From: Octopus sinensis
Lineage: Eukaryota
Assembly: GCF_006345805.1 (NCBI RefSeq)
Contig: NC_043018.1
Span: 2,666,001 to 2,730,000, forward strand
Length of the DNA stretch: 64,000 nt
Direction of reading: 5' to 3'
Position numbers and translations under genes: made by a program. The notes beneath the pieces are model-generated. The model had not been told where the DNA came from. It worked only from the letters and a program-made list of their open reading frames with translations, and made no database searches. Shown here piece by piece: positions 4,766-49,643 of the stretch (its first letter is position 1; each line of letters begins with the position of its first letter).

Positions 4766-6119
4766 TAATAATAATAATAATAATAATTATGATAATGATG
4801 ATGATGATGATGATGATGATACATCTGTGTGTTTGTTTGTTAGTTTGTGTGTCTGCGTGTGTACAGATGTGTAATTCTCAATGTAAGTATACATCTGCGC
4901 ATATATGCGTACCTATTTGTATGAGAGTGTGTGAGTATGCATGCACGTGTATGTGTGTGCATATATTTATATGTCCTTTTGTGCACAGAGTCTTCTCTTT
5001 AAATTTATCTCATTTCGTGTACGTAACATATAAAACATCATGGAAAAACTTCACACATTCATACCCAACTTGAAATATACAAATATATACACATGACTTG
5101 GCATATCTCTAACTGAACATACATGCGCACTTGTGTGTTTTTCGTGTGAATATATCTCTAGGGACATATATACACAGACACGTACTCGAACACGTATCTA
5201 CAAGCGTATGTACGCATAAATATGTTTGTAAGATACTTAATGACACATGAGCAGACATACTTATATATTTAAATTGACACAAACTCCTGGATAGAATCAT
5301 AGATACACTTGTGCTAAGCCATATAAATCCATGCATTGAAGCACATAGATATTATATATACCGTCACGGAAATGGGGAAAATGTGAAGGGAATAAAATGC
5401 AAAAGACTTGCACCGACGAATTTGAATTGCTTATTATTCTAAGCAGTCTTTTCGTTGGCAGCAATTTAACAGGATGTTTGGGAGATGGGAATAACAGGTG
5501 TAGAGCTCATGACAAAAGACACATAAACTCTCGAAATAGCGATAAGAAAATCCTATGAAATTAAAGCTGTAAATGTTTTTGCACGAGTGTTAGAAGAGAG
5601 CAGCCACACCTTGAAATCTTACAAGATCTGTGTGAGAAGACCGCGAAAAATCCGTATTTAATCAATAATCTCGCCTAAAATTGGATAATATTCACGCGCT
5701 GGCTCCACATTGTAAATACTTTTCTCTTTCGAGTTTACTTTAAGTTTAAATGAAGATGGTGACAGAAAGAATAATAGCAATAACGAAGACAACCTAAAGA
5801 ATGTAAACAACAGCGGCGGCGATTACAACAAAAACAACAAATTAGGAAATGACGTTAATCATTAAAGAAATTTTTTTTTTCATAAATAATTGAAAAATAA
5901 ACAATGATACAAGACAAAAACTGTATTGATATTCGATGGATTTCATTGATTGTGATTATTTTACCGGTACATATCTATTGATTCTGGCAAGAAACAATCA
6001 CGGTAATGAACCTCGACATAACTTGCAAGGAACCACAAGGGCACGTGACCCAGATAACAAATTACTAATGTAATACTGAGTTCTATATTTGTGTATAGCA
6101 ATTGCTTCAAATATAGTTT

Positions 6120-6660
6120 ATTACTTTATTTGACTCAAATCCGGACTGCTGCCCTTTGTGCCCCAACATGTGGTCTTCCCATACAAAACAAAACATTTCG
6201 AGAATTGAATCCCCCAAAGGACATTCACTAAGGGAAGTAAAAGCATCTCTGATCTCGATTATTGGGACTTCTTTAAAGCATTGAAACACTATTCCCTCCA
6301 GCACCGCCGTCAGCGATACAAGATTTTCACAATATGAAGAATGTACCACAAGAATTGCCGCAACAGCCTTAACATTAGTTTCAGAATTCAATCAAGGTAG
6401 GATAACTTTCCACACGTCACCTAAACAATTCAAAGATGGCAACACATAAAGACACCGCAACGCATAAAGACACCGCAACACAATTTCGTTTACTCAACAG
6501 GGTCTTCCCTATTTAACATTGTTCCAAAACATTTCAAAGAGGAAAAATACCCCGTTACCTTTGAACGGAATCTGGACAAAATTCTTCAAGAGATAACAGA
6601 TAAGTTACGTATATCTAGAAACAACTCCCTCAGCATGATCTCCCTACTTGAATGGGTCAT
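6120..6660 (+). mobile_element. Decayed CR1/L2-group LINE, C-terminal RT region
   Basis: Translation across stops and shifts gives DCCPL..WSSHTKQNISRIE, DLDYWDFFKALKHYSLQHRRQRYKI and LFNIVPK...FERNLDKILQEITD. These resemble the YW.RL..L.LYSL.RRR.R and LFN.LP...FK..LD motifs of CR1-group ORF2. Confidence 0.75.
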
Positions 6661-6759
6661 GATATCAAAACATTTGACTTTAAAAGGGTTTAGCAAATCT
6701 GAACAGGATTATATTAAATTGACATGGCCTAGGCCAATCTTTGGTTGAAACAATCTAAG

Positions 6760-6823
<64 letters not shown>

Positions 6824-7212
6824 GGGAAAGTTTACGAAAAAGACAAAAGACGAAGACAGGTGATGTACAAAGCAAACAGATGTATTAGTATAACACTCAG
6901 GAATAGAAAAAGTCTTTTACGTTCGAGCCTACGCTCTTCTACGGAATGGGACACAGAGAAAGAAGGCGAGAAAAAAATGTGTGTACTCGCTAACGATCTA
7001 TCTATATGCTTGAGCATATGTATGTATATATCGATATGTGTGTGTTTTATATGTATATCTGTAATATTAGCAAACAATATATGTTTATCTTAACACGTGT
7101 TGGGTGCATGTGTGTATGTGCGTGTGTTTGCATATGTATATATATAAATCACATTTTCGGGGACTTCATATATCTGTTAAAATGTCTCTTTCATGAGTAC
7201 CGCTATTTATAT

Positions 7213-7298
7213 TCTCCCTGAAGATATTTATACAAGCTGACCATACTTTATGCTATCGGATACATTTTAGATGCGTCCATCGAAACATGTGTAGGAGA
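7213..7298 (+). ncRNA. Degenerate type I hammerhead ribozyme-like motif
   Basis: TCTCC-CTGAAGA-(57 nt)-GAAAC-ATGT-GTA-GGAGA. The core, GUA triplet and 5-bp stem I are present, but the base of stem II does not pair. Confidence 0.35.
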
Positions 7299-7490
7299 TA
7301 TGAAGATATAAATGATTTAATAGTATTTTGAGCGTTTGTTTCCATTTTCTATTTTTCATGTTTTTCTCCTAAACGCCTCTTGCTTGTCCCCGGATTCAAA
7401 TCCCAAACATACGTGTCCATTGTTTCTTAGGTCACTTAAACAAGATTTAGCTACCTTGGAATTATTCCCTCGGATCCTATTGTACACTTA

Positions 7491-7881
7491 TACTCTTTTA
7501 CTCTTTTACTCTTTTACTTGTTTCAGTCATTTGACTGTGGCCATGCTGGAGTACCACCTTTAGTCGAGCAAATCGACCCCGGAACTTATTCTTTGTAAGC
7601 CCAGTACTTATTCTATCGGTCTCTTTTGCCGAACCGCTAAGTGACGGGGACGTAAACACACCAGCATCGGTTGTCAAGCAATGCTAGGGGGACAAACACA
7701 GACACACAAACACACACATACATATATATATACATATATACGACAGGCTTCTTTCAGTTTCCGTCTACCAAATCCACTCACAAGGCTTTGGTCGGCCCGA
7801 GGCTATAGCAGAAGACACTTGCCCAAGATGCCACGCAGTGGGACTGAACCCGGAACCATGTGGTTGGTTAGCAAGCTACTT
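7491..7881 (-). mobile_element. SINE family A, body and tail of a copy split by a nested insertion
   Basis: Reverse-complement family A sequence from the (TACTCTTT)n tail through ...ccgggttcagtcccactgcgtggcatcttggg. It stops abruptly at gttagcaagctactt (7867-7881). Confidence 0.95.
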
Positions 7882-8053
7882 TATTTCAAAACATTTGCCA
7901 TAAAGGCAGTACACAGATTAAGTTAGCTTTGCGGGCTGGACGAGGACATTAATGAAGTGAATGATAATGAAAGAAAGATGATAAGGATGGGAGAAGACAG
8001 AAAGCGCCCGCCGACTTTTGCTTCTCTAAAACATTGTTCTTTTTAAGATAAAC

Positions 8054-8178
8054 ACAAAACGAGGTATTAACCTCTTACAATTTTTCCAATTTGGACTTAG
8101 CAGTCCATTATTAATACAAAACGAGGTATTAATCCTCTTACATTTTTCAATTTTTGGACTTAAGTCCATTACTAATAA
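8054..8178. repeat. Two ~62-bp tandem units, each with two small inverted repeats
   Basis: Units start with acaaaacgagg at 8054 and 8116. Each contains GAGG-N6/7-CCTC and TGGACT-N-AGTCCA. Confidence 0.9.
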
Positions 8179-8797
8179 TACATAGCTTGTGCCCGCGCCC
8201 TCCACCATCAACCACGCCTCCCTCAGAACGTAGTCAAGTTCCGAGTTCCCGTCGCCCGGGACCAAGTTATAATCTTCATTGAGCTCCTTTAGCCCTAGCG
8301 TCACGTCGAACGCCACGGCCTCCACAGCTACCTGCGGAGGCCATTCGGGGTCCTGTGTGAAGGCTAAAGGTGCTCCCTTGTAGTGCTCTTCCATCACTTT
8401 TTCAATTTCTCCTCCTCTATAGAAGAGGACCAATACATTTAGTTCTTTCGTTGGCGGCACAGTTTCCGCCAACGGTATTCCTTCTCTTGTCGGTGGCACA
8501 ACCCCAACCGACGTAGTTCCGCGACATTTCGGTGCTACACTGACTGCCGGTATGTCCCGTTTTTCTTCTTTTTCTTTTTCTTTTTTTTCCCTTTTCAACT
8601 GAGGGAGGGTGCGTCTCCTCCGTGGCTGGAAGATTCGCCTTCCTCTCCTCATCCCTATTATCCTTTGGTGCCACCCATTGTTGCTCACTTCCTCTTTCGG
8701 TCTCCTCGTTGAGGAGTCCTCTGCTTTCTCGGCCGTTATCGTTCCCTCTCTAGAGGGGTTTTACTTAACTGTTCCGGGATCCTTTTTGTTCCCGAGG

Positions 8798-8839
8798 ACA
8801 GTTCTTCTTTATGTGGCCGGACTCCAAGCACCGATGACA
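8798..8839 (-). other. CX2CX4HX4C zinc-knuckle coding motif (CHRCLESGHIKKNC)
   Basis: Minus strand tgt cat cgg tgc ttg gag tcc ggc cac ata aag aag aac tgt, preceded by EGRPPE. It lies outside the ORFs called in the track. Confidence 0.9.
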
Positions 8840-10086
8840 CTCAGGGGGGCGACCCTCAAGCATCACCGGGTACCTGCACCCGGCCATTTCAAAAAAAATC
8901 TGGAAGAACCAGATTGGCTGATTGGGTCCACAGGGTCAAAATTGCTTTTGACCCACACAAGCAGCCGCAGAAGAACTTTTACATTGAGGACTTAGTTTCG
9001 CTGTCACCCAGACCCCGGCGGATAGTCTCCTCTATCCACTCGGTTTCTATGTCGGGTGGCAGTCCCGCAGATCCAAGCTTTCATCAATTTTTTTTTTGTA
9101 CGTGGGCAGGAATAAGATTTCCTTACCCTCCAGGGGTTTGCTAGCCTCTTCAGGGGTCAAATAGCAACCACACCGTTGCATATTTGACACCCTGGAAATG
9201 AATTTAATTGTTGGCAATACTCTTCCAACTCCTTTTTCAATTGCCGTCTTTTCGAATAGGGCGATGGTGTCAAGTGCCTTGGAGTAGGTTCTCAACACCA
9301 CCGTCCTATCTTCACGGTCTTTTACCACTTTTTGGGTGGTATGATTTCCCCACTCCAAAATTTTGTTATTTTTCATTGCCATGTTTTTTTTAAAAATATA
9401 TTCAAATTAAACTCAAAAGCAGGAAGAAAAAAGTTCAAAAGTCTAAATAAAATTTGTAGATTTTTGAAAAAAACAAAAAGGAGAAAGCACAACAGAAGGG
9501 AAGAAATTAACGGAAAGTCGCAATAAGAAAAGAAAACAAAAGGGGGGGGGGTTAAATGAAGTTCAAAGAAAGTTAATAAACAGAAAAAACACAGCAAAAT
9601 ATTCTGGCCTTGCGGTACTCCCCGCCTGGGTTGAACCTGGAACGACGCAACTGCAAACACAACCTCCACAAAAATGGGTCCGAAAGGTAATCCAATAGTG
9701 GCTTATTTTTATAATTTTCTTGCGAAGTACTCTGACAAGGGAATAAATTCAGCAAACTCAAACACAGCACTGGCTACTGCCAACGGTAATTTTAACAGTA
9801 ACTGTATGAATTCTGAGTATAGACGCCCCTCCACTGTTTTTTTCTTTTTTTTTTTTCAATGAACACAAAAACGGCAGCCGCCTAGCGCAGGCGAAATTGT
9901 CTCAGAGTTGCACACAACCTACTGAAATAATAATTGGCACGCAATAAATTATGCCCAACTCACGATAAACAAAATCACTTACCTCGACAACTTTCCGTTT
10001 TTGGTCTTTTTTCTTTAGTTGGACAGAGCTTGTTACTCACGTCCACTCTAGCTCAACAAGAAGCAACCGACTAACTGCGCATGTGC

Positions 10087-10124
10087 GTTAGCAAGCGACT
10101 TACCACACAGCCACTCCTGCGCCC
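10087..10124 (-). mobile_element. SINE family A, 5' head (A box) of the split copy plus second TSD copy
   Basis: Minus strand gggcgcaggagtggctgtgtggt-aagtcgcttgctaac, the missing 5' end of the SINE at 7491-7881. Confidence 0.95.
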
Positions 10125-10155
10125 TATATATTATATATATATAATATATATATAT

Positions 10156-10187
<32 letters not shown>

Positions 10188-10443
10188 CTCGATTCAAGGA
10201 TGTCAATCTTCATTGGGGATTAATAATCCAAAAATTCCACTGGTTAATTACTATCATATAAGAAAGAAAGTCTGGACGATATGTTAGGGATTATCATAGT
10301 AATACATATCATTAATAATGAAAGAAAAAAAAATAAAGAATTATGGGTTTATAATTAATGAATTTGTATGATATTTGGTTGATAGTTTTTTTTTTATAAA
10401 ATACAAGTAAATTATAAAGGTCAAAAAAGGAATGGCAGGTGCC

Positions 10444-10569
10444 AAAATCCTACATATGTTTCGATTCATGCCTCCAAGCAATTCGTAATTCTAAGCATTT
10501 GAGTAGGGTCAAATGTAAACAATCGGTCATCCTTTTCAACTATATGGTGTAGAATCTCATCAGGGTTTT
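10444..10569 (-). ncRNA. Type I hammerhead ribozyme motif with 84-nt insertion in stem II (PLE terminal-repeat type)
   Basis: Minus strand AAAACC-CTGATGA-GATTC-(84 nt)-GAATC-GAAAC-ATAT-GTA-GGATTTT. Intact core, 5-bp stem II, palindromic stem III ACATATGT, GUA triplet, and stem I with one bulge. Confidence 0.7.
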
Positions 10570-12230
10570 ATGAGCTTATACGACAAAGGTTAACATACTT
10601 CTTGAATGGATACTGACGAAGTGCTAAGAAGTTTAACAAGTTACATCATATATATTATGCGTATGTATTTATCTTCAGAATCATAGATGTAAGTAAATGT
10701 AATCTAAAAATAACTAACATAAAAATTATAAGATAAAGTAAGAAGGTATAAAGAAACGATAAATATAAATGTATGTGAAATATAATATATATATATATAT
10801 ATATCTAATTATATATATATATATATATATTATATATATTATATATATAGGTAAAAGAAAACAAAATACTTAAATATGGAAGGATAGAAAAATTTTATCA
10901 TAAAATTAATGAAAGATAAGCTAGATAATAAAAATGTAATTAGTCGACCGTTATACATGAATCATTTTCATTGGGTGGTAACAGATAGAGTTCAGGAAAT
11001 ATATGGATGCTCAGCGTTCACATGAAATGATGTCATAATTAAAACCAAGTATAGACAAAAGTTTGAAATGCCTGAGCGTTAAGATATGTAACTTGGAAGT
11101 CTTAAATGTAAACTCGTAGTCGTCAATATATTAAGCGTATACATTTATATTTATGTATTTACACATTCTTGAACTATCACTAGCGTCCTTATGGGTTAAA
11201 AAAAAGACAATCTTTGCAGAGAACAGTTGCCGTTTAGAGAAACTGAAGAGATGCCTAGGTCACGCTACACATGAAACCAATGGGCTTTTTGTAAACTGGT
11301 ATGTTACTCCTACAAATATATGTACACACACACACACACCACATACACACACACACACCACCACACACACACCACACACATATATATATATATAATATTA
11401 TATATATATATATATATATACATACATACATACATACATACATACATACATACATACATACTACATACATACATACATATATACATACATACATACACTC
11501 ACACACAAAAAATATATTTATAACATTTATTTTCATTTGTTTATTTTCAGAAAGGCTAAGTTGTTAGAATTATTTTATAGGAAGTTTAATAATATCTAGA
11601 ATTGATCATTTAAGAGATCAAATAAAAAGAACGGTTGAACGATGGAGTGAAGAGAAAAAGAATAAAACAAAAAACATGAAAAAAATATAGTAGAATAAAA
11701 AGCAGCATACATTAGATATTTGATATAGTGTTGCATATTTTGTTTGTAATTAATAATTAGTGACTAAATAAATAATCAAAGAAGAGATTTCTTCATTAAA
11801 TGTTGGAACTGCGTATCATATATGAAGTCAGCGTAGTATTTGTATTTCTGATCGATATTTTGCTAAGGTAGATTAGAACTATTTAGTAGTTTAACTGAGT
11901 TTTGTTATATAAAGATGATCTAAGAAAGAGAAATTATATAATTTACTCTGTAAAAATAAGAAAGAAATGACACATATACTAGGAATTTATAGGTAGGGAA
12001 ATGTTATTTATATATTACGAAAGAAATGAAACAAAATGATTATTGGAATATAACCATTTATATTTATTTCATGCATGTCATAGAAATATGTATATTAAGG
12101 CAAGATATTACATATTTTATATTGTATAAAATTATAGCTATAATGATGGTTCTAAAATGTATCTAATAAATTCAGTCTTGTAAAAATATCATTCGTTAAT
12201 CAGGAATGTAACAATTAACTATGTTAATAA

Positions 12231-12460
12231 TTAATACTTAGGACTGTGTGTGAAAGCCGAGAATTGTTTAACTCTCTCATTTAATAATCGATTAATTGAG
12301 AAAAGGATATTATAGCACTCTGGTGTGCAGAGTTGGCAACTTCTATCTGGTGCTTGGTAAGGTTTTGCAGAATATATAATCTTCCATCGAATTTTAAAAC
12401 TGATATTACTCTCTATTAATTTTCCAGATTAATTTACTGAGACTGCTCCATTCACTTACC
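12231..12460 (-). mobile_element. Penelope-like element remnant, C-terminus of the GIY-YIG region
   Basis: Translation with one shift: SEWSSLSKLIWKINRE / ISFKIRWKIIYSAKPYQAPDRSCQLCTPECYNILFS..LLNERVKQFSAFTH. This resembles the PLE end motif LSK.IW.LK...W.I...AKPY....C.LC..E...I......LN.R.E..S.C.H. Confidence 0.75.
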
Positions 12461-12483
12461 ATATATGTATGTATATACGTATA

Positions 12484-12890
12484 TTCTTTTATTATTTTAC
12501 TTGTTACAGTCATTTGGCTGTGGCCATGCTGGAGCACCACGTTTAGTCGAACAAATAACCCCAGTACTTATTCTATCAGTCTCTTTTGCTGAACCGCTAG
12601 ATTACTAGGACTTCAATTCACCAGCAACGGTTTTCAAGCGATGGTGGGGGACAAACACAGACACAAATAATACACACACACACACTCACAAAATATGTAT
12701 ACGTACATATATTCATATATGACAGGCTTCTTTCAGTTTCTGTCTACCAAATCTACTTACAAATCTTTGGTCGGCCCAAGGATATAGTAGATAACACTTT
12801 CCCAAGGTTCCACGTACTGGGAGGGACCTGAACACGGAACCATGTGGTTGGGAAGCAAGCTTCTTACTACACACACCCACTCCTGCGCCC
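12484..12890 (-). mobile_element. SINE family A, near full length
   Basis: From the tail ...ttttacttgttacagtcatttggctgtggccatgctggagcacc to the head cactcctgcgccc. Confidence 0.9.
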
Positions 12891-12926
12891 CTCTATATTT
12901 ACATTTAAATATATATATATATATAT

Positions 12927-12964
<38 letters not shown>

Positions 12965-13696
12965 TTCCACGCATGGAAATTTATTCTCGTCCCCTTTGAG
13001 TGCTTCTGTTATTTTTGGGTGGATTGTCTTCTTAAATGTTAAAGCTTGATTATCAACGAGAAAGCAGCCTCGTTTCTAAAGGCGTTCCTACATTTAAGAC
13101 CCTTCCAGGTCATGTGCAGTACATCCGATTGATCCCCCTTGCAAACAGGTGTACAGTGAGATTTCCCTATTTTCATAAGATAGTGTGTGACTAGTGACTA
13201 GAACGATGACTTAAAGATGGTTAGTGTTATTGATTTTTGCATCCACTGACGTGTGTTATGAGCGGTTCCTTCAGTATATCGCCATAAACCGAGGGAAAGA
13301 TTTTGCCTCATGCATTTATTATATATATGACTATCGTTATTATATGCATTCTTTAATTCAACAGTTGGTCATATAAGTTTAGCTTTAATGCGAAACCTTA
13401 TTACGTCCCGGATTTAAAGCAATATATACATATTAACTCTGTATGAGATATTCAAGATAACACCATTTCTGTACTTTTGTTTTCACGTAGGAACTTTTCT
13501 GTATAACTCTGATGCATACATTTAATTTTCTTTTTCAGTATTTTGAGGGGGAAATATCTCGTCTCTTGAGGAACTGAGATGTGCAATGTGAAACAGATAT
13601 TTGTCACTCGCACAAATATATGTATATATATGCATACTCATTCACACACAGACACAAATGTATGTGGGTATGTGTAAATATATACATACATACATA

Positions 13697-15351: not shown

Positions 15352-15770
15352 TTTCTTTTTCCTTCCTCTCTTTCTTATTTCTTTCTTTCTTTTGTTTCCT
15401 TCTCTTTTTCTTTCTTCCTTTTTTTCTATCGTGTTTTGTTTTTTCTTCATTTCGCTTTTTACATCTTCCGCCTTTCATTCATTTCATTCACGTCTTCATT
15501 CGTTGATTCTTTGATATCCGTATTTATGCCTTCATTCTTTCTTTCATTTATCTTTCCTTCTTCTTTTCCTTCGTTTCATTCAGTCTTTCTTTCTACCTTT
15601 TTCGTTTCTTTCCTTCTTTCTTTCTTTCTTTCTTTCTTTCTTCTGCATATCATTCAGCCGCGCGCTCTCTTTCTCTCTCTCGTTCTTTGTCTCTATCTGT
15701 ATTATCTATTATACACACACACACACACACACACATATAATAATATATTGGAGTGGGATATGTATGTATA

Positions 15771-15809
<39 letters not shown>

Positions 15810-15840
15810 AGTGCGTGTGTATATACATGTATCTATGTAT

Positions 15841-15898
<58 letters not shown>

Positions 15899-16968
15899 AG
15901 AGAGACATAGAGAGAGATATGGATGGATAGATGGATAGATAGAGAGACGAAACACAAATTGTGTACCTCTCCCCATCCCATCTACAATTTTTATCTACCT
16001 GTACACATTTCCATCTTTTTCCATATTTACTTACCTTGGTGCCACTTATCTCTGTATCGTTGTATTCCCCTACACCTCTTTCCACCTCTACATGTGCTTT
16101 GTCACGTGCCTAACTTACGAGGTTTCTGACAAATCCTTTTACGTTTCTAGCCATCATATCCTAATTTTCCGTTTGCCAAATCCTACCCCTTCTCTCTCTC
16201 TCCCTCTTTCAAGTCACTAATATTCTTTCCTTTCTCCCCTCTACGAAGCAAGCCACCATAAGGCTATTTCTTCCTGTTTTTCATACTACTCTTTCCTTTT
16301 ATATCTGACCGTTGGACCGGATAATCATCTCCTTTGGCTGTAGATTTCGTAAATTTTCTTTGCTTTCGTTTCTCTCCGACAAAGCAGAAAGAGACTTTAT
16401 CTTTCCCGTTTGCATTGCTTTTTTCTTTATTCTTAATTCTGTCGCTAAAACGAAAGATGTATGTAGGTCTGTTTCGTTTTGTATCTTTTCAAATTTTCCT
16501 CCCAACGCGTCTTTATTAAACATTCGGTCTACGAACCTCATTTTTTTCCCTCTTCTTGCTATTGTTAGTCTAATGCATCAGAACGTCGATACTCAATCAG
16601 AATATGCTGGTGACACTTCTCTATTGAACCATAACGTCGATATGTGCCTAAAATGTGTTTATATTTGGTTCAAAATTGATGAGAGAAGTTGTGACTATCA
16701 GTTCAAGATATTTCTTATTTTTATTGTCCCGCGGATTTCTTTGTCAATTTGTACATTGTTGTCGTTATACATATATTTACGTACAGCGTAGAAGTACATG
16801 TATTTGTAAATATAAATACACAAACACACATACACACCACACTCACACAACACATGTAAACAGAGAGACAGGTATATATTTAGCAGAAGCATCAAGGACC
16901 AAGTTTTTCTTGAGTTGACACAAAAGAATAAACATGCATACACACACACATATATATATTATATATAT

Positions 16969-44986: not shown

Positions 44987-45086
44987 NNNNNNNNNNNNNN
45001 NNNNNNNNNNNNNNNNNNNNNNNNNNNNNNNNNNNNNNNNNNNNNNNNNNNNNNNNNNNNNNNNNNNNNNNNNNNNNNNNNNNNNN
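44987..45086. other. Assembly gap (100 N)
   Basis: Run of exactly 100 N, a placeholder of unknown true size. Confidence 1.
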
Positions 45087-49370: not shown

Positions 49371-49643
49371 GGAGTGGCTGTGTGGTAAGTAGCTTGCTTA
49401 CGAACCACATAGTTCCAGGTTCAGTCCCACTGCATGGCACCTTGGGCAAGTGCCTTCTACTATAGCCTCGAGCCGACCAAAGCCTTGTGAGTGGATTTGG
49501 TAGATGGAAACTGAAAGAATCCCGTCGTACATATGTATATTTATGTGTGTGTGTGGTGTGCATGTTTATGTGTCTGTGTTTGTTCCCCCAACATCGCTTG
49601 ACAACCGGTTCGGTAAAAGGAAAAGGAACCCGATAGTATAAGT
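49371..49643 (+). mobile_element. SINE family A, tail-truncated, with ~32-bp internal deletion
   Basis: From ggagtggctgtgtggtaagtagcttgc to cgatagtataagtactaggcttacaatgaataa. Confidence 0.92.

What the first reader, a model, noticed from the sequence alone, without database searches (positions are those of the whole stretch)
7867..10101. Both-ends-defined, 2.2-kb gag-only retroelement nested in a SINE (candidate HAL1-like family)
Seen in sequence: a SINE A head is split by 2,205 bp flanked by a 15-bp duplication (gttagcaagc[t/g]actt). Both repeats carry 'gctaac' (minus strand), where the intact copy at 49381 has 'gcttac', so the target itself was duplicated. The insert has a ~700-nt 5' UTR, one gag/ORF1-like frame with EGRPP-CX2CX4HX4C, and a ~145-nt 3' UTR ending GAAATAA next to the TSD. 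No APE, RT, integrase, LTRs or TIRs are visible. Established knowledge: TSDs of 7-20 bp and an A-rich 3' junction are typical of L1/Tx1 target-primed reverse transcription. 5'-truncated LINEs lose ORF1 first rather than ORF2, and ORF1-only 'half-L1' (HAL1) elements are known from a few lineages. Inference: this is a non-autonomous retrotransposon that keeps its own RNA-binding protein and borrows RT in trans. I am not aware of one described from cephalopods, but cannot search.
Basis: partly seen in the sequence, partly recalled or inferred. Interest (0 to 1): 0.88.

Follow-up and report, generated by a model that had tools for sequence, protein, structure and literature searches.

The report
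Protein-only LINE remnant inside octopus SINE
A decayed 2.2-kb jumping gene that carries only the RNA-binding protein of an L1/Tx1-type LINE (no reverse transcriptase) sits inside an octopus SINE, and it matters mainly because every known copy of its small family is joined to the same nucleotide of that SINE.

Summary
A 2,205-bp insert (7882-10086, gene on the minus strand) splits a SINE head and is flanked by a 14/15-identical 15-bp duplication. Joining the flanks restores a colinear SINE.

The insert has a 704-nt 5' UTR and one ORF1-type gene: two RRM folds plus one CX2CX4HX4C knuckle. It has no APE, RT, LTRs or TIRs. The gene is not one frame. It is broken by at least six frameshifts and two stops.

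The 'gag' is a Type I LINE ORF1p. Distant octopod relatives sit directly upstream of APE-RT-zf ORF2s that align along most of their length with human L1 ORF2p. The only two close relatives, both in O. sinensis, also lack ORF2. Third codon positions diverge about twice as fast as first and second positions, so ORF1 was under selection while the family diversified.

A second ORF1-only family exists in O. vulgaris.

So the HAL1-like reading is largely supported, on three old, dead copies.

One new finding: all three copies abut SINE nucleotide 37. That points to Tx1-style target preference or an inherited SINE-derived head. These tools cannot separate the two.

This is a new variant of a known kind, of moderate interest.

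The parts
7882..10086 (-). The 2,205-bp insert: an ORF1-only element derived from an L1/Tx1-type LINE.
   Evidence: It is bracketed by the 15-bp duplication, and the joined flanks restore the SINE. It is 75% identical in DNA to O. sinensis copies L001 and L002.
10087..10101 (-). Target-site duplication, copy on the element's 5' side (AAGTCGCTTGCTAAC on the minus strand). It corresponds to SINE nt 23-37.
   Evidence: (D9)
7867..7881 (-). Target-site duplication, copy on the element's 3' side (AAGTAGCTTGCTAAC on the minus strand).
   Evidence: D9. It shares the private TAAC variant with the other copy.
10087..10123 (-). SINE head nt 1-37 (GGCGCAGGAGTGGCTGTGTGGTAAGTCGCTTGCTAAC) directly 5' of the element. 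The same 37 nt precede the element in L001 (9453-9489) and L002 (15704-15740).
7560..7866 (-). The rest of the host SINE (nt 38 to about 345), including its internal (TA/TG)n stretch. The 3' limit is approximate.
   Evidence: Alignment to other SINE copies.
9383..10086 (-). 5' UTR, 704 nt. Its first bases hold a GCACATGCGC palindrome-like motif (10086-10072) that is kept in all three copies. A 61-nt intron-like segment GT...AG lies at 9982-9922.
   Evidence: The L002 5' UTR is 698 nt (15741-16438; measured 701 nt from 15738), but only about 51-66% identical.
8786..9382 (-). ORF1 core: the start codon at 9382, two RRM-like domains and one CX2CX4HX4C knuckle (8839-8798). It is broken by at least six frameshifts and an in-frame stop.
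   Evidence: After frame correction it is 67% identical to P0001. AF2 pLDDT is 87.6, and Foldseek top hits are tandem-RRM proteins. Pfam zf-CCHC scores 18.1 bits, below the 20.8 cut-off. Frame map.
8552..8785 (-). Charged K/E/R-rich linker after the knuckle. It contains stops and a frameshift in an A-run.
   Evidence: It aligns to the C-terminus of P0001 and to L002.
8179..8550 (-). Family-specific C-terminal region (124 codons, open in the window). It is conserved in L002 (55% aa identity, all indels in threes) and begins in L001. Its fold and function are unknown.
   Evidence: No homologue was found in 5.8 billion proteins. There is no codon-position bias and no profile match to the C-termini of relatives.
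7882..8178 (-). 3' UTR (about 297 nt). It has a 62-bp tandem duplication (8048-8177) and the terminal motif GCCTTTATGGCAAATGTTTTGAAATA (about 7907-7882), which resembles the 3' ends of related autonomous LINEs. AATAAA lies at 7885-7880. There is no poly(A) tail.
   Evidence: The motif was compared by eye with L003, L005, L004 and L002.

Best explanation
This is a dead copy of a small, old family of non-autonomous non-LTR retrotransposons in octopods. The family descends from L1/Tx1-type LINEs and keeps only the first gene.

**Structure.** That gene encodes a Type I ORF1p: two RRM domains, one CCHC zinc knuckle, a charged linker and a family-specific C-terminal region. The element has its own roughly 700-nt 5' UTR and a short LINE-like 3' end. 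It has no endonuclease or reverse transcriptase.

**Shown.**
- The copy entered the head of a SINE, in the same orientation, and generated a 15-bp target duplication (SINE nt 23-37).
- Other family copies also lack ORF2.
- The RRM-CCHC part evolved under purifying selection while the family diversified.

**Inferred.**
- The RNA was coated by its own ORF1p.
- It was copied into DNA at a nick (window plus strand ...GCTACTT|ACCAC...) by the ORF2 protein of a related autonomous LINE acting in trans. The two terminal A's of the RNA paired with the TT of the primer.

**The SINE link.** The element is not randomly associated with the SINE. In all three known copies its first base follows SINE nucleotide 37. 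Two explanations remain:
- The partner enzyme prefers that site, as Tx1 elements prefer fixed positions in other transposons or small-RNA genes.
- The family carries a 37-nt SINE-derived head as its own 5' end, and that head annealed to a genomic SINE when the window copy integrated.

**State of this copy.** It is now inert, with at least six frameshifts and at least two stops. It is roughly 20-45 million years old by a rough published octopus calibration.
For: **Insertion**
- TSD and restored SINE.
- The private TAAC variant is present in both TSD copies.

**Protein identity**
- The only close relatives in 5.8 billion proteins are O. sinensis P0001 and P0009.
- The AF2 model of P0001 residues 1-205 has pLDDT 87.6. 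Its top PDB matches are all tandem-RRM proteins: SFPQ/NONO, hnRNP A1 UP1 and raver1.
- The CCHC motif is seen directly.

**LINE ancestry**
- An exhaustive HMMER search gave 68 relatives at E<=1e-3, about 25-30% identical. The seven of these whose source organism was looked up are all octopod; three others looked up came from unnamed metagenome or Logan assemblies.
- In L003 and L005, ORF1 is followed by APE (Exo_endo_phos), RT (RVT_1) and zf-RVT.
- The intact 1,132-aa ORF2 of L005 aligns over residues 3-868 with human L1 ORF2p at E=2e-71.
- L1-Tx1 families are annotated as recently active in O. vulgaris (PMC13282606).
- Type I ORF1p means RRM plus CCHC, as in Tx1 and plant L1 (PMC5203782).

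**ORF1-only as a family trait**
- There is no ORF2 similarity in the window or next to the L001 and L002 copies.
- L002 has a complete ORF1 followed by about 110 nt and then (GT)n.

**Selection**
- Mismatch rates at codon positions 1/2/3 are 0.19/0.15/0.38 (L001-L002, p=2e-8), 0.18/0.14/0.38 (L001-window, p=5e-9) and 0.16/0.14/0.24 (L002-window, p=0.009).

**Precedent in the same genomes**
- A second ORF1-only family exists in O. vulgaris (L004, L007). The two copies share ORF1 and 3' UTR and lack ORF2. There are 70-77 stops per frame in the 4 kb downstream of L004.

**SINE link**
- The junction is identical in three copies, while the upstream flanks are unrelated.
- Tx1 elements are known to target fixed positions in other transposons, and some carry U1/U2-derived heads (PMC4494074).
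Against: - Only three family copies could be examined, because no octopus genome can be searched by DNA here.
- Only the window copy has two defined ends. No TSDs were found around L001 or L002.
- The 3' UTRs of the window and L002 copies are not significantly alignable. A shared ORF2-deletion junction, which would be the direct proof that the ORF1-only form itself multiplied, has therefore not been shown.
- No autonomous partner with a matching 3' end has been identified. The 3'-terminal motif similarity was judged by eye.
- The C-terminal region shows no sign of protein-level constraint.
- L002 has the SINE head but no SINE downstream. A simple 'always inserts into the SINE' model does not predict this.
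Confidence: 0.72

Rival explanations
1. This is a one-off internal deletion. The family is an ordinary autonomous ORF1+ORF2 LINE, and each ORF1-only copy seen here lost ORF2 independently, during or after insertion. On this view the ORF1-only form never multiplied as such.
For: - The window and L002 copies lose similarity right after the ORF1 stop, and their 3' UTRs do not align. No shared deletion junction is therefore demonstrated.
- Only three copies were sampled.
- Purifying selection on ORF1 would equally arise inside autonomous masters.
Against: - Both copies with a complete ORF1 end (window, L002) lack ORF2 and end within 110-300 nt.
- Among 5.8 billion predicted proteins and 1.84 billion representatives, no ORF1 close to this family is attached to or found beside an ORF2.
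- An unrelated ORF1-only family with two concordant copies exists in O. vulgaris.
Confidence: 0.15
2. This is a retrocopy of a host gene. On this view a domesticated ORF1-derived cellular gene produces mRNA that LINE machinery occasionally retroposes, and the window insert is one such processed pseudogene.
For: - The element looks gene-like. It has a long 5' UTR with an intron-like GT...AG segment and AATAAA at the 3' end.
- The ORF shows purifying selection.
- NCBI annotates the O. sinensis copy as gene LOC115225585.
Against: - All three copies are pseudogenes or truncated. In P0001 the first two knuckle cysteines are replaced (FHLC).
- No intact gene was found in any database searched.
- The intron-like segment is retained rather than removed.
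- There is no poly(A) tail.
- The 5' end is full-length and joined to the same SINE nucleotide in unrelated loci.
- L001 is not orthologous to the window.
Confidence: 0.05
3. This is the gag remnant of an LTR retrotransposon or endogenous retrovirus, which is the literal 'gag-only retroelement' reading.
For: A CCHC knuckle also occurs in retroviral nucleocapsids. Pfam gives only a weak zf-CCHC hit.
Against: - There are no LTRs.
- The fold is tandem RRM rather than capsid.
- Every relative with a neighbouring gene has an APE-RT LINE ORF2.
- A 15-bp TSD is not of the integrase type.
Confidence: 0.01

Closest known systems
HAL1 ('half-L1') of mammals (Smit 1999; Bao and Jurka 2010, as summarised in PMC5753468)
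   Same: Both are non-autonomous derivatives of an L1-group LINE that encode only ORF1p and must use ORF2p in trans. HAL1 arose several times independently. Here too, two separate ORF1-only families are seen in octopods: this one and L004/L007.
   Different: - HAL1 ORF1p is the Type II coiled-coil/RRM/CTD protein (Transposase_22). This one is Type I (2 RRM + CCHC), with no Transposase_22 hit.
- HAL1 has poly(A) tails and thousands of copies. This element has no tail, and only three copies are known.
- The host is a cephalopod.
- This element is linked to a fixed site in a SINE.
Tx1-clade LINEs with target preference: Tx1L into Tx1D, Tx1-Mar into Mariner-N4_AMi, Keno into U2, and Kibi/Koshi into microsatellites (PMC4494074)
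   Same: - The ORF1 type is the same (RRM+CCHC).
- In relatives, ORF2 has APE, RT and a zinc finger.
- Relatives are flanked on both sides by one microsatellite: L003 by (ATT)n and L004 by (TA)n.
- Tx1 elements insert at a fixed position of another transposon.
- Some Tx1 families carry small-RNA-derived heads at their 5' ends.
   Different: - This element has no ORF2 of its own.
- A SINE as the target or head donor was not mentioned in the papers read here.
- Clade placement by RT phylogeny could not be done. Only similarity to human L1 ORF2p and the zf-RVT domain were shown.
Non-autonomous LINEs made by internal deletion, and SINEs built from a small-RNA head plus LINE ends: Bov-A/Bov-tA and SINE2-1_ACar from Vingi (PMC4494074)
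   Same: These keep LINE 5' and 3' ends without the enzyme gene. If the 37-nt SINE piece is an inherited head, the layout 'tRNA-like head + LINE-derived body' is the same idea.
   Different: Those elements are short and non-coding. This one keeps a 1.2-kb protein gene that was under selection.

Membership tests
LINE Type I ORF1p (RRM + CCHC) | At least one RRM fold. | tested here: met
   The AF2 model of the 67%-identical relative P0001 (residues 1-205) has pLDDT 87.6 and two beta-alpha-beta-beta-alpha-beta units. Foldseek top hits are all tandem-RRM proteins. The model is of the relative, not of the broken window copy.
LINE Type I ORF1p (RRM + CCHC) | A CX2CX4HX4C zinc knuckle after the RRMs. 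| tested here: met
   CHRCLESGHIKKNC at 8839-8798. Pfam zf-CCHC scores 18.1 bits, just under the 20.8 cut-off. The motif EGRxPxCxxCxxxGHxxxxCP is shared with the relatives.
LINE Type I ORF1p (RRM + CCHC) | Encoded upstream of an APE-RT ORF2 in a non-LTR retrotransposon. | tested here: met
   Met for distant relatives L003 and L005. By definition it is not met in this element, which lacks ORF2.
HAL1 (half-L1) | An L1-derived element that encodes ORF1p only. | tested here: met
   No APE or RT in the insert or in the other two family copies. Relatives' ORF2 aligns to human L1 ORF2p.
HAL1 (half-L1) | ORF1p of the mammalian L1 type (coiled coil + RRM + CTD, Pfam Transposase_22). | tested here: not met
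   No Transposase_22 hit. The architecture is 2 RRM + CCHC.
HAL1 (half-L1) | Many copies sharing the same ORF1-only structure, each with its own TSD and A-tail, which proves the half element itself multiplied. | tested here: inconclusive
   Three copies are known and one has a TSD. There are no A-tails, and the 3' UTRs are not alignable.
Tx1 clade of non-LTR retrotransposons | Placement of the RT domain inside the Tx1 clade by phylogeny (RTclass1). | not testable with these tools
   The element has no RT. The relatives' ORF2 was only shown to be L1-group: E=2e-71 to human L1 ORF2p against 1e-24 to R2, with a zf-RVT domain present.
Tx1 clade of non-LTR retrotransposons | Target-sequence preference. 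| tested here: inconclusive
   Relatives are flanked on both sides by one microsatellite: L003 by (ATT)n and L004 by (TA)n. In this family 3 of 3 copies join SINE nt 37, but only the window copy has the SINE on both sides.
Processed pseudogene / retrogene | A poly(A) tail and loss of introns relative to a parent gene. | tested here: not met
   There is no A-tail at 7882, and an intron-like GT...AG segment is retained at 9982-9922. No parent gene was found.
LTR retrotransposon / ERV gag | LTRs, a capsid fold and a short integrase-type TSD. | tested here: not met
   No terminal direct repeats apart from the 15-bp TSD. The fold is tandem RRM.

The most novel reading that the evidence does not exclude
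The element may be a 'SINE-homing' protein-coding parasite of a parasite.

On this reading, an ORF1-only Tx1-like retrotransposon has RNA bounded by SINE sequence at both ends. The 5' end carries head nt 1-37. The 3' end carries read-through past the terminal AATAAA into SINE nt 23 onward.

Integration would then be guided to one fixed position in the tRNA-like head of the most abundant octopus SINE, through enzyme preference plus annealing at both ends. Off-target events would carry the head along, as in L002.

This would be the first LINE-derived element known to use a SINE as its landing pad. It would also be an invertebrate, Type I-ORF1p counterpart of HAL1.
Probability: 0.25. Interest if true: 0.7.

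Novelty: new variant of a known kind. Interest (0 to 1): 0.5.

Why it matters
ORF1-only 'half LINEs' are described from mammalian L1. The literature searches run here found no invertebrate, Tx1-like or cephalopod example.

Finding two independent ORF1-only families in octopods, one with a signature of selection on the protein, has two implications:
- Loss of ORF2 with retention of ORF1 may be a recurrent evolutionary route.
- A cis-acting ORF1p can be worth keeping even when the enzyme is borrowed.

The fixed junction with a SINE head, if confirmed genome-wide, would extend the Tx1 habit of targeting other repeats to SINEs. SINEs make up about 12% of the O. vulgaris genome.

It would also give a natural case for studying how flanking homology guides target-primed reverse transcription.

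For annotation, it warns that gene models such as LOC115225585 and XP_029639579 are decayed transposon ORFs.

Tried and rejected
Searches and tests that gave nothing:
- **Pfam on the three raw ORF pieces:** only a sub-threshold zf-CCHC.
- **First homologue search:** It was repeated without the linker.
- **C-terminal region:**
  - PDB sequence search gave only noise.
  - There was no hit in 5.8 billion proteins.
  - hhalign against the C-termini of relatives gave probability 0.2, so my by-eye 'FPxDVG' parallel is rejected.
  - The AF2 single-sequence model had pLDDT 36 and was uninformative, so no fold search was made.
- **Rfam at E<=1:** only a SCARNA7 hit at 20.7 bits against a cut-off of 65, which is noise. 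No HDV-like ribozyme was found.
- **ARAGORN:** no tRNA anywhere. The SINE head is too degenerate.
- **TSD search around head plus element in L001 and L002:** only chance 9-mers.
- **SINE remainder 3' of L002:** not above shuffles.
- **Shared upstream flank of L001 and L002** (a CTTTTCAT 8-mer caught my eye): not above shuffles.
- **Window versus L002 3' UTR alignment:** not above shuffles.
- **Exact-protein look-ups:** the window 220-aa ORF and P0025 are not on record.
- **Metagenome scan for a 28-nt conserved coding stretch:** 0 hits.

Hypotheses rejected:
- **The window locus is the source of the O. sinensis copies.** Its SINE carried TAAC before insertion, whereas their heads carry TTCC.
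- **L001 is the orthologue of the window locus.** The flanks share no similarity.

- L004 and L006 were never available to scripts, so L004 was handled with the sequence tools only. L006 (Argonauta) was not analysed.
Full report
**1. The observation**

Read on the minus strand, the sequence runs in this order:
- a SINE head, GGCGCAGGAGTGGCTGTGTGGT;
- the 15-mer AAGTCGCTTGCTAAC (10101-10087);
- 2,205 bp of foreign sequence (10086-7882);
- the 15-mer again, AAGTAGCTTGCTAAC (7881-7867);
- the SINE continuing as CAACCACATGGTTCCGGGTTCAGTCC...

The repeat finder reports the pair as D9, at 93% identity. With one copy of the 15-mer removed, the joined flanks align without a break to the intact SINE at 49527-49370 (92.4% over 158 nt). 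They also align to four more SINE copies in the window.

Both 15-mers carry TAAC where other copies have TTAC or TTCC.

The insert has no terminal inverted or long direct repeats.

**2. What the insert encodes**

The only gene starts at ATG 9382, after a 704-nt leader. It is not one frame. Guided by its relatives, the reading path changes frame at least six times and meets in-frame stops near 8980 and 8767.

After correction, the first 200 residues are 67% identical to P0001, an O. sinensis protein (LOC115225585).

An AlphaFold model of P0001 residues 1-205, built on 32 relatives, is confident (pLDDT 87.6). Its best matches among solved structures are all two-RRM proteins: SFPQ/NONO, hnRNP A1 UP1, raver1 and IMP3 RRM12.

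The RRMs are followed by EGRPPECHRCLESGHIKKNC. Pfam sees this only just below its zf-CCHC cut-off.

Next come a K/E/R-rich linker and a 124-codon C-terminal region (8550-8179). That region is open in the window. It is shared with the L002 copy (55% aa identity, all indels in threes) and with the start of L001. It has no other relative and no predictable fold.

Two RRMs plus a CCHC knuckle is the Type I ORF1p of non-LTR retrotransposons, typical of Tx1 and plant L1 (PMC5203782). It is not a retroviral gag.

**3. Relatives and what lies next to them**

The word-indexed search of 5.8 billion proteins found only P0001.

The exhaustive HMMER search of 1.84 billion representatives found 68 proteins at E<=1e-3. 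One is P0009, a chimeric O. sinensis gene model whose residues 83-128 belong to this family. The rest are about 25-30% identical. Of the ten looked up, seven come from Octopus sinensis, O. bimaculoides, O. vulgaris and Argonauta hians; the other three come from unnamed Logan, ENA or JGI assemblies.

Their loci fall into two groups.

*Autonomous LINEs:*
- In L003 (O. sinensis), ORF1 is followed after about 60 nt by an ORF2 with Exo_endo_phos, RVT_1 and zf-RVT domains. The whole element sits between two runs of (ATT)n.
- In L005 (O. vulgaris), ORF1 and ORF2 alternate in a head-to-tail array. One ORF2 is intact at 1,132 aa. It aligns over residues 3-868 with human L1 ORF2p at E=2e-71, against 1e-24 for R2 proteins.

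The superfamily is therefore L1-group. Given the Type I ORF1p, the zinc finger and the microsatellite targets, it is most like Tx1. A recent O. vulgaris repeat annotation lists L1-Tx1 among recently active families (PMC13282606).

*ORF1-only elements:*
- L004 and L007 (O. vulgaris) share ORF1 and 3' UTR but have no ORF2. There is no ORF2 similarity within 6 kb of L007.
- The 4 kb downstream of L004 has 70-77 stops in each forward frame.
- L004 lies between two (TA)n runs.

This is a second, independent ORF1-only family.

**4. Is the missing ORF2 a family trait?**

The two other copies of the window's own family are L001 (element from 9490) and L002 (element 15741 to about 17766). They are about 75% identical in DNA to the window copy, over the ORF for L001 and from the distal 5' UTR to the ORF1 stop for L002.

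Neither copy has APE or RT similarity beside it. L001 is cut inside the C-terminal region by another repeat at about 10976. L002 has the whole ORF1, with two frameshifts and several stops. About 110 nt and then (GT)n follow it.

Mismatches between copies are not spread evenly over codon positions:

| Pair | Position 1 | Position 2 | Position 3 | p |
|---|---|---|---|---|
| L001-L002 | 0.19 | 0.15 | 0.38 | 2e-8 |
| L001-window | 0.18 | 0.14 | 0.38 | 5e-9 |
| L002-window | 0.16 | 0.14 | 0.24 | 0.009 |

Much of the divergence therefore built up while the RRM-CCHC protein was under purifying selection. The copies stem from separately evolving, functional lineages. They are not the decay of one insertion.

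The C-terminal region shows no such bias (0.29/0.18/0.21). The 5' UTRs keep their length (704 versus 698 nt) but are only 51-66% identical.

The direct proof is missing. No deletion junction shared by copies with their own TSDs was found. The 3' UTRs of the window and L002 copies do not align above shuffles, and no TSDs were found for L001 or L002.

I therefore rate the ORF1-only-family reading at about 0.72, and independent deletions of an unseen autonomous family at about 0.15.

**5. The SINE is not an incidental target**

In all three copies the element's first base follows SINE nucleotide 37:
- window: ...GTAAGTCGCTTGCTAAC|GCACATGCGCAG
- L001: ...GTAAGTAGCTTGCTTCC|TGTGCATGCG
- L002: ...GTAAGAAGTTTGCTTCC|ACTGCGCATGTGCG

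In each case the SINE piece starts at its own nucleotide 1. The sequences upstream of it are unrelated, and L001 is not orthologous to the window.

SINEs make up 11.6% of the O. vulgaris genome and the SINE is about 345 nt long. A random insertion would therefore hit this nucleotide in this orientation about 2 times in 10,000.

The window locus cannot be the source of the other two copies. Its SINE had TAAC before the insertion, and theirs read TTCC.

The L002 head carries variants (GGCGTTG, AAGAAG) that also mark a second SINE subfamily seen elsewhere: window 2029, window 12889 and L003 6890. This leans towards independent SINE copies, but 37 nt is too little to be sure.

L002 argues against a simple 'inserts into the SINE' model. 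It has the head, a complete ORF1 and what looks like its own 3' end (...CTTATGGATATTTGAAT; compare the window's ...CTTTATGGCAAATGTTTTGAAATA). It has no SINE sequence downstream.

Two models remain, and both have precedent in the Tx1 clade (PMC4494074):

- **(i) Target preference for a fixed position of another repeat**, as with Tx1 into Tx1D or Tx1-Mar into Mariner-N4_AMi. Off-target copies would carry a co-transcribed head.
- **(ii) A SINE-derived 37-nt head inherited as the element's own 5' end**, as with the U1/U2 heads of some Tx1 families. The window copy would then have been resolved by annealing of that head to a genomic SINE. In that case the 15-bp 'TSD' is simply the distance from the nick (after SINE nt 22) to the end of the head.

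Model (ii) fits L001 and L002 best. It needs the window nick to have fallen in the first 37 nt of a SINE, which is about 0.6% a priori. Model (i) fits the window best. A copy census would decide between them.

**6. Mechanism (inferred)**

The element ends without a poly(A) tail. Its last bases, GCCTTTATGGCAAATGTTTTGAAATA, resemble by eye the 3' ends of the related LINEs:
- L003: GCCCTTGTGGCCAATAAAAAG
- L005: GGCCCCTTGTGGGTAAATAAAATAAAA
- L004: GGCCTTGTGCCTATAATAAAG

These were seen.

The AATAAA signal is completed by the first two bases of the target copy (7885-7880). Transcripts would therefore run some way into the flanking SINE before cleavage.

The first-strand nick is at ...GCTACTT|ACCAC on the window plus strand, which is a TT|A step.

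I infer the following sequence of events:
1. The element's own ORF1p coated the RNA.
2. An ORF2p from a related autonomous LINE nicked the target and primed on the TT.
3. It copied the RNA to its 5' end.
4. The second strand was joined 15 bp upstream.

None of these steps was observed directly.

**7. Age and state**

The copy is dead, and so are its two relatives. In P0001 the first two knuckle cysteines are replaced (FHLC).

I applied the calibration in PMC13282606 (JC 0.2 is about 56 My) to per-lineage distances of about 0.08-0.15, derived. This puts the insertions very roughly 20-45 My ago. The estimate is order-of-magnitude only.

**8. Comparison with known families, and verdict**

The element works like HAL1, the mammalian half-L1 that encodes only ORF1p and arose several times (PMC5753468). 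It is not a member of HAL1. The protein type differs, there is no A-tail, and the host is a cephalopod.

By its relatives it belongs with L1/Tx1-type LINEs. The papers found here on octopus repeats (PMC9115989, PMC13282606) do not mention ORF1-only elements or SINE-directed LINEs. This is not an exhaustive literature or Repbase check.

The added finding is the fixed SINE-nucleotide-37 junction.

I rate this a new variant of a known kind, with interest 0.5.

Noticed in passing
L005 2058-5456 (O. vulgaris OX597840.1): An intact 1,132-aa APE-RT-zf ORF2 sits in a head-to-tail array of ORF1/ORF2 units (ORF2, ORF1, ORF2, ORF1...). It looks like a recently active L1/Tx1-type LINE. It is a candidate source of reverse transcriptase in trans for ORF1-only elements.
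   Followed up: partly
L004 about 7640-9720 and L007 about 5830-7750 (O. vulgaris): This is a second ORF1-only family, unrelated at the DNA level to the window element. It has ORF1 (P0007/P0012) plus a shared 3' UTR and no ORF2. L004 lies between two (TA)n runs, and its ORF1 is intact at 389 aa.
   Followed up: partly
L003 about 7780-13345 (O. sinensis CM016872.1): A full-length LINE (ORF1 + APE-RT-zf ORF2, decayed) is flanked on both sides by (ATT)n. This suggests a microsatellite-targeting lineage.
   Followed up: partly
window 9982-9922 (minus); L002 about 15840-15896; L001 about 9585-9660: An intron-like segment sits about 105 nt into the 5' UTR (GAG|GTAAGT ... TTATTTCAG|T, 61 nt in the window). 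GTAAG/GTAGG donor-like sites occur at the same place in the other two copies. Whether it is spliced is unknown.
   Followed up: no
window 10086-10072 (minus); L001 9490-9500; L002 15741-15755: The first bases of the element hold a GCGCATGCGC-like palindrome (GCACATGCGCAG / TGTGCATGCG / ACTGCGCATGTGCG) in all three copies. It may be a promoter or start-site element. The SINE has CACATG five bases beyond the junction, which could be microhomology.
   Followed up: no
window 8048-8177: The window copy's 3' UTR has a tandem duplication of a roughly 62-bp unit (76-86% identical). It is absent from L002. The mechanical 220-aa ORF runs through it by chance.
   Followed up: partly
window 10124-10190, and the 5' flanks of SINE copies at 2029, 12889, 18500 and 49370: SINE copies are typically preceded by TA-rich or (TA)n sequence ending ...TATA(G)|GGCGCAGG. 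This suggests that the SINE's own partner enzyme prefers TA repeats, as the L004-type element does.
   Followed up: no
L002 10001-36638 (gene model XP_029639579, P0009): The annotated 'K02A2.6-like' protein is a chimera. It joins 46 residues of this ORF1 family to an integrase (rve) fragment from an unrelated LTR element about 20 kb away. LOC115225585 (P0001) is likewise a decayed transposon ORF.
   Followed up: partly
window 44987-45086: A run of 100 N marks an assembly gap.
   Followed up: no
window 10019-10239 (minus): A weak Rfam SCARNA7 match (20.7 bits, cut-off 65, E=0.03) spans the (TA)n, the SINE head and the element start. I treated it as noise.
   Followed up: no
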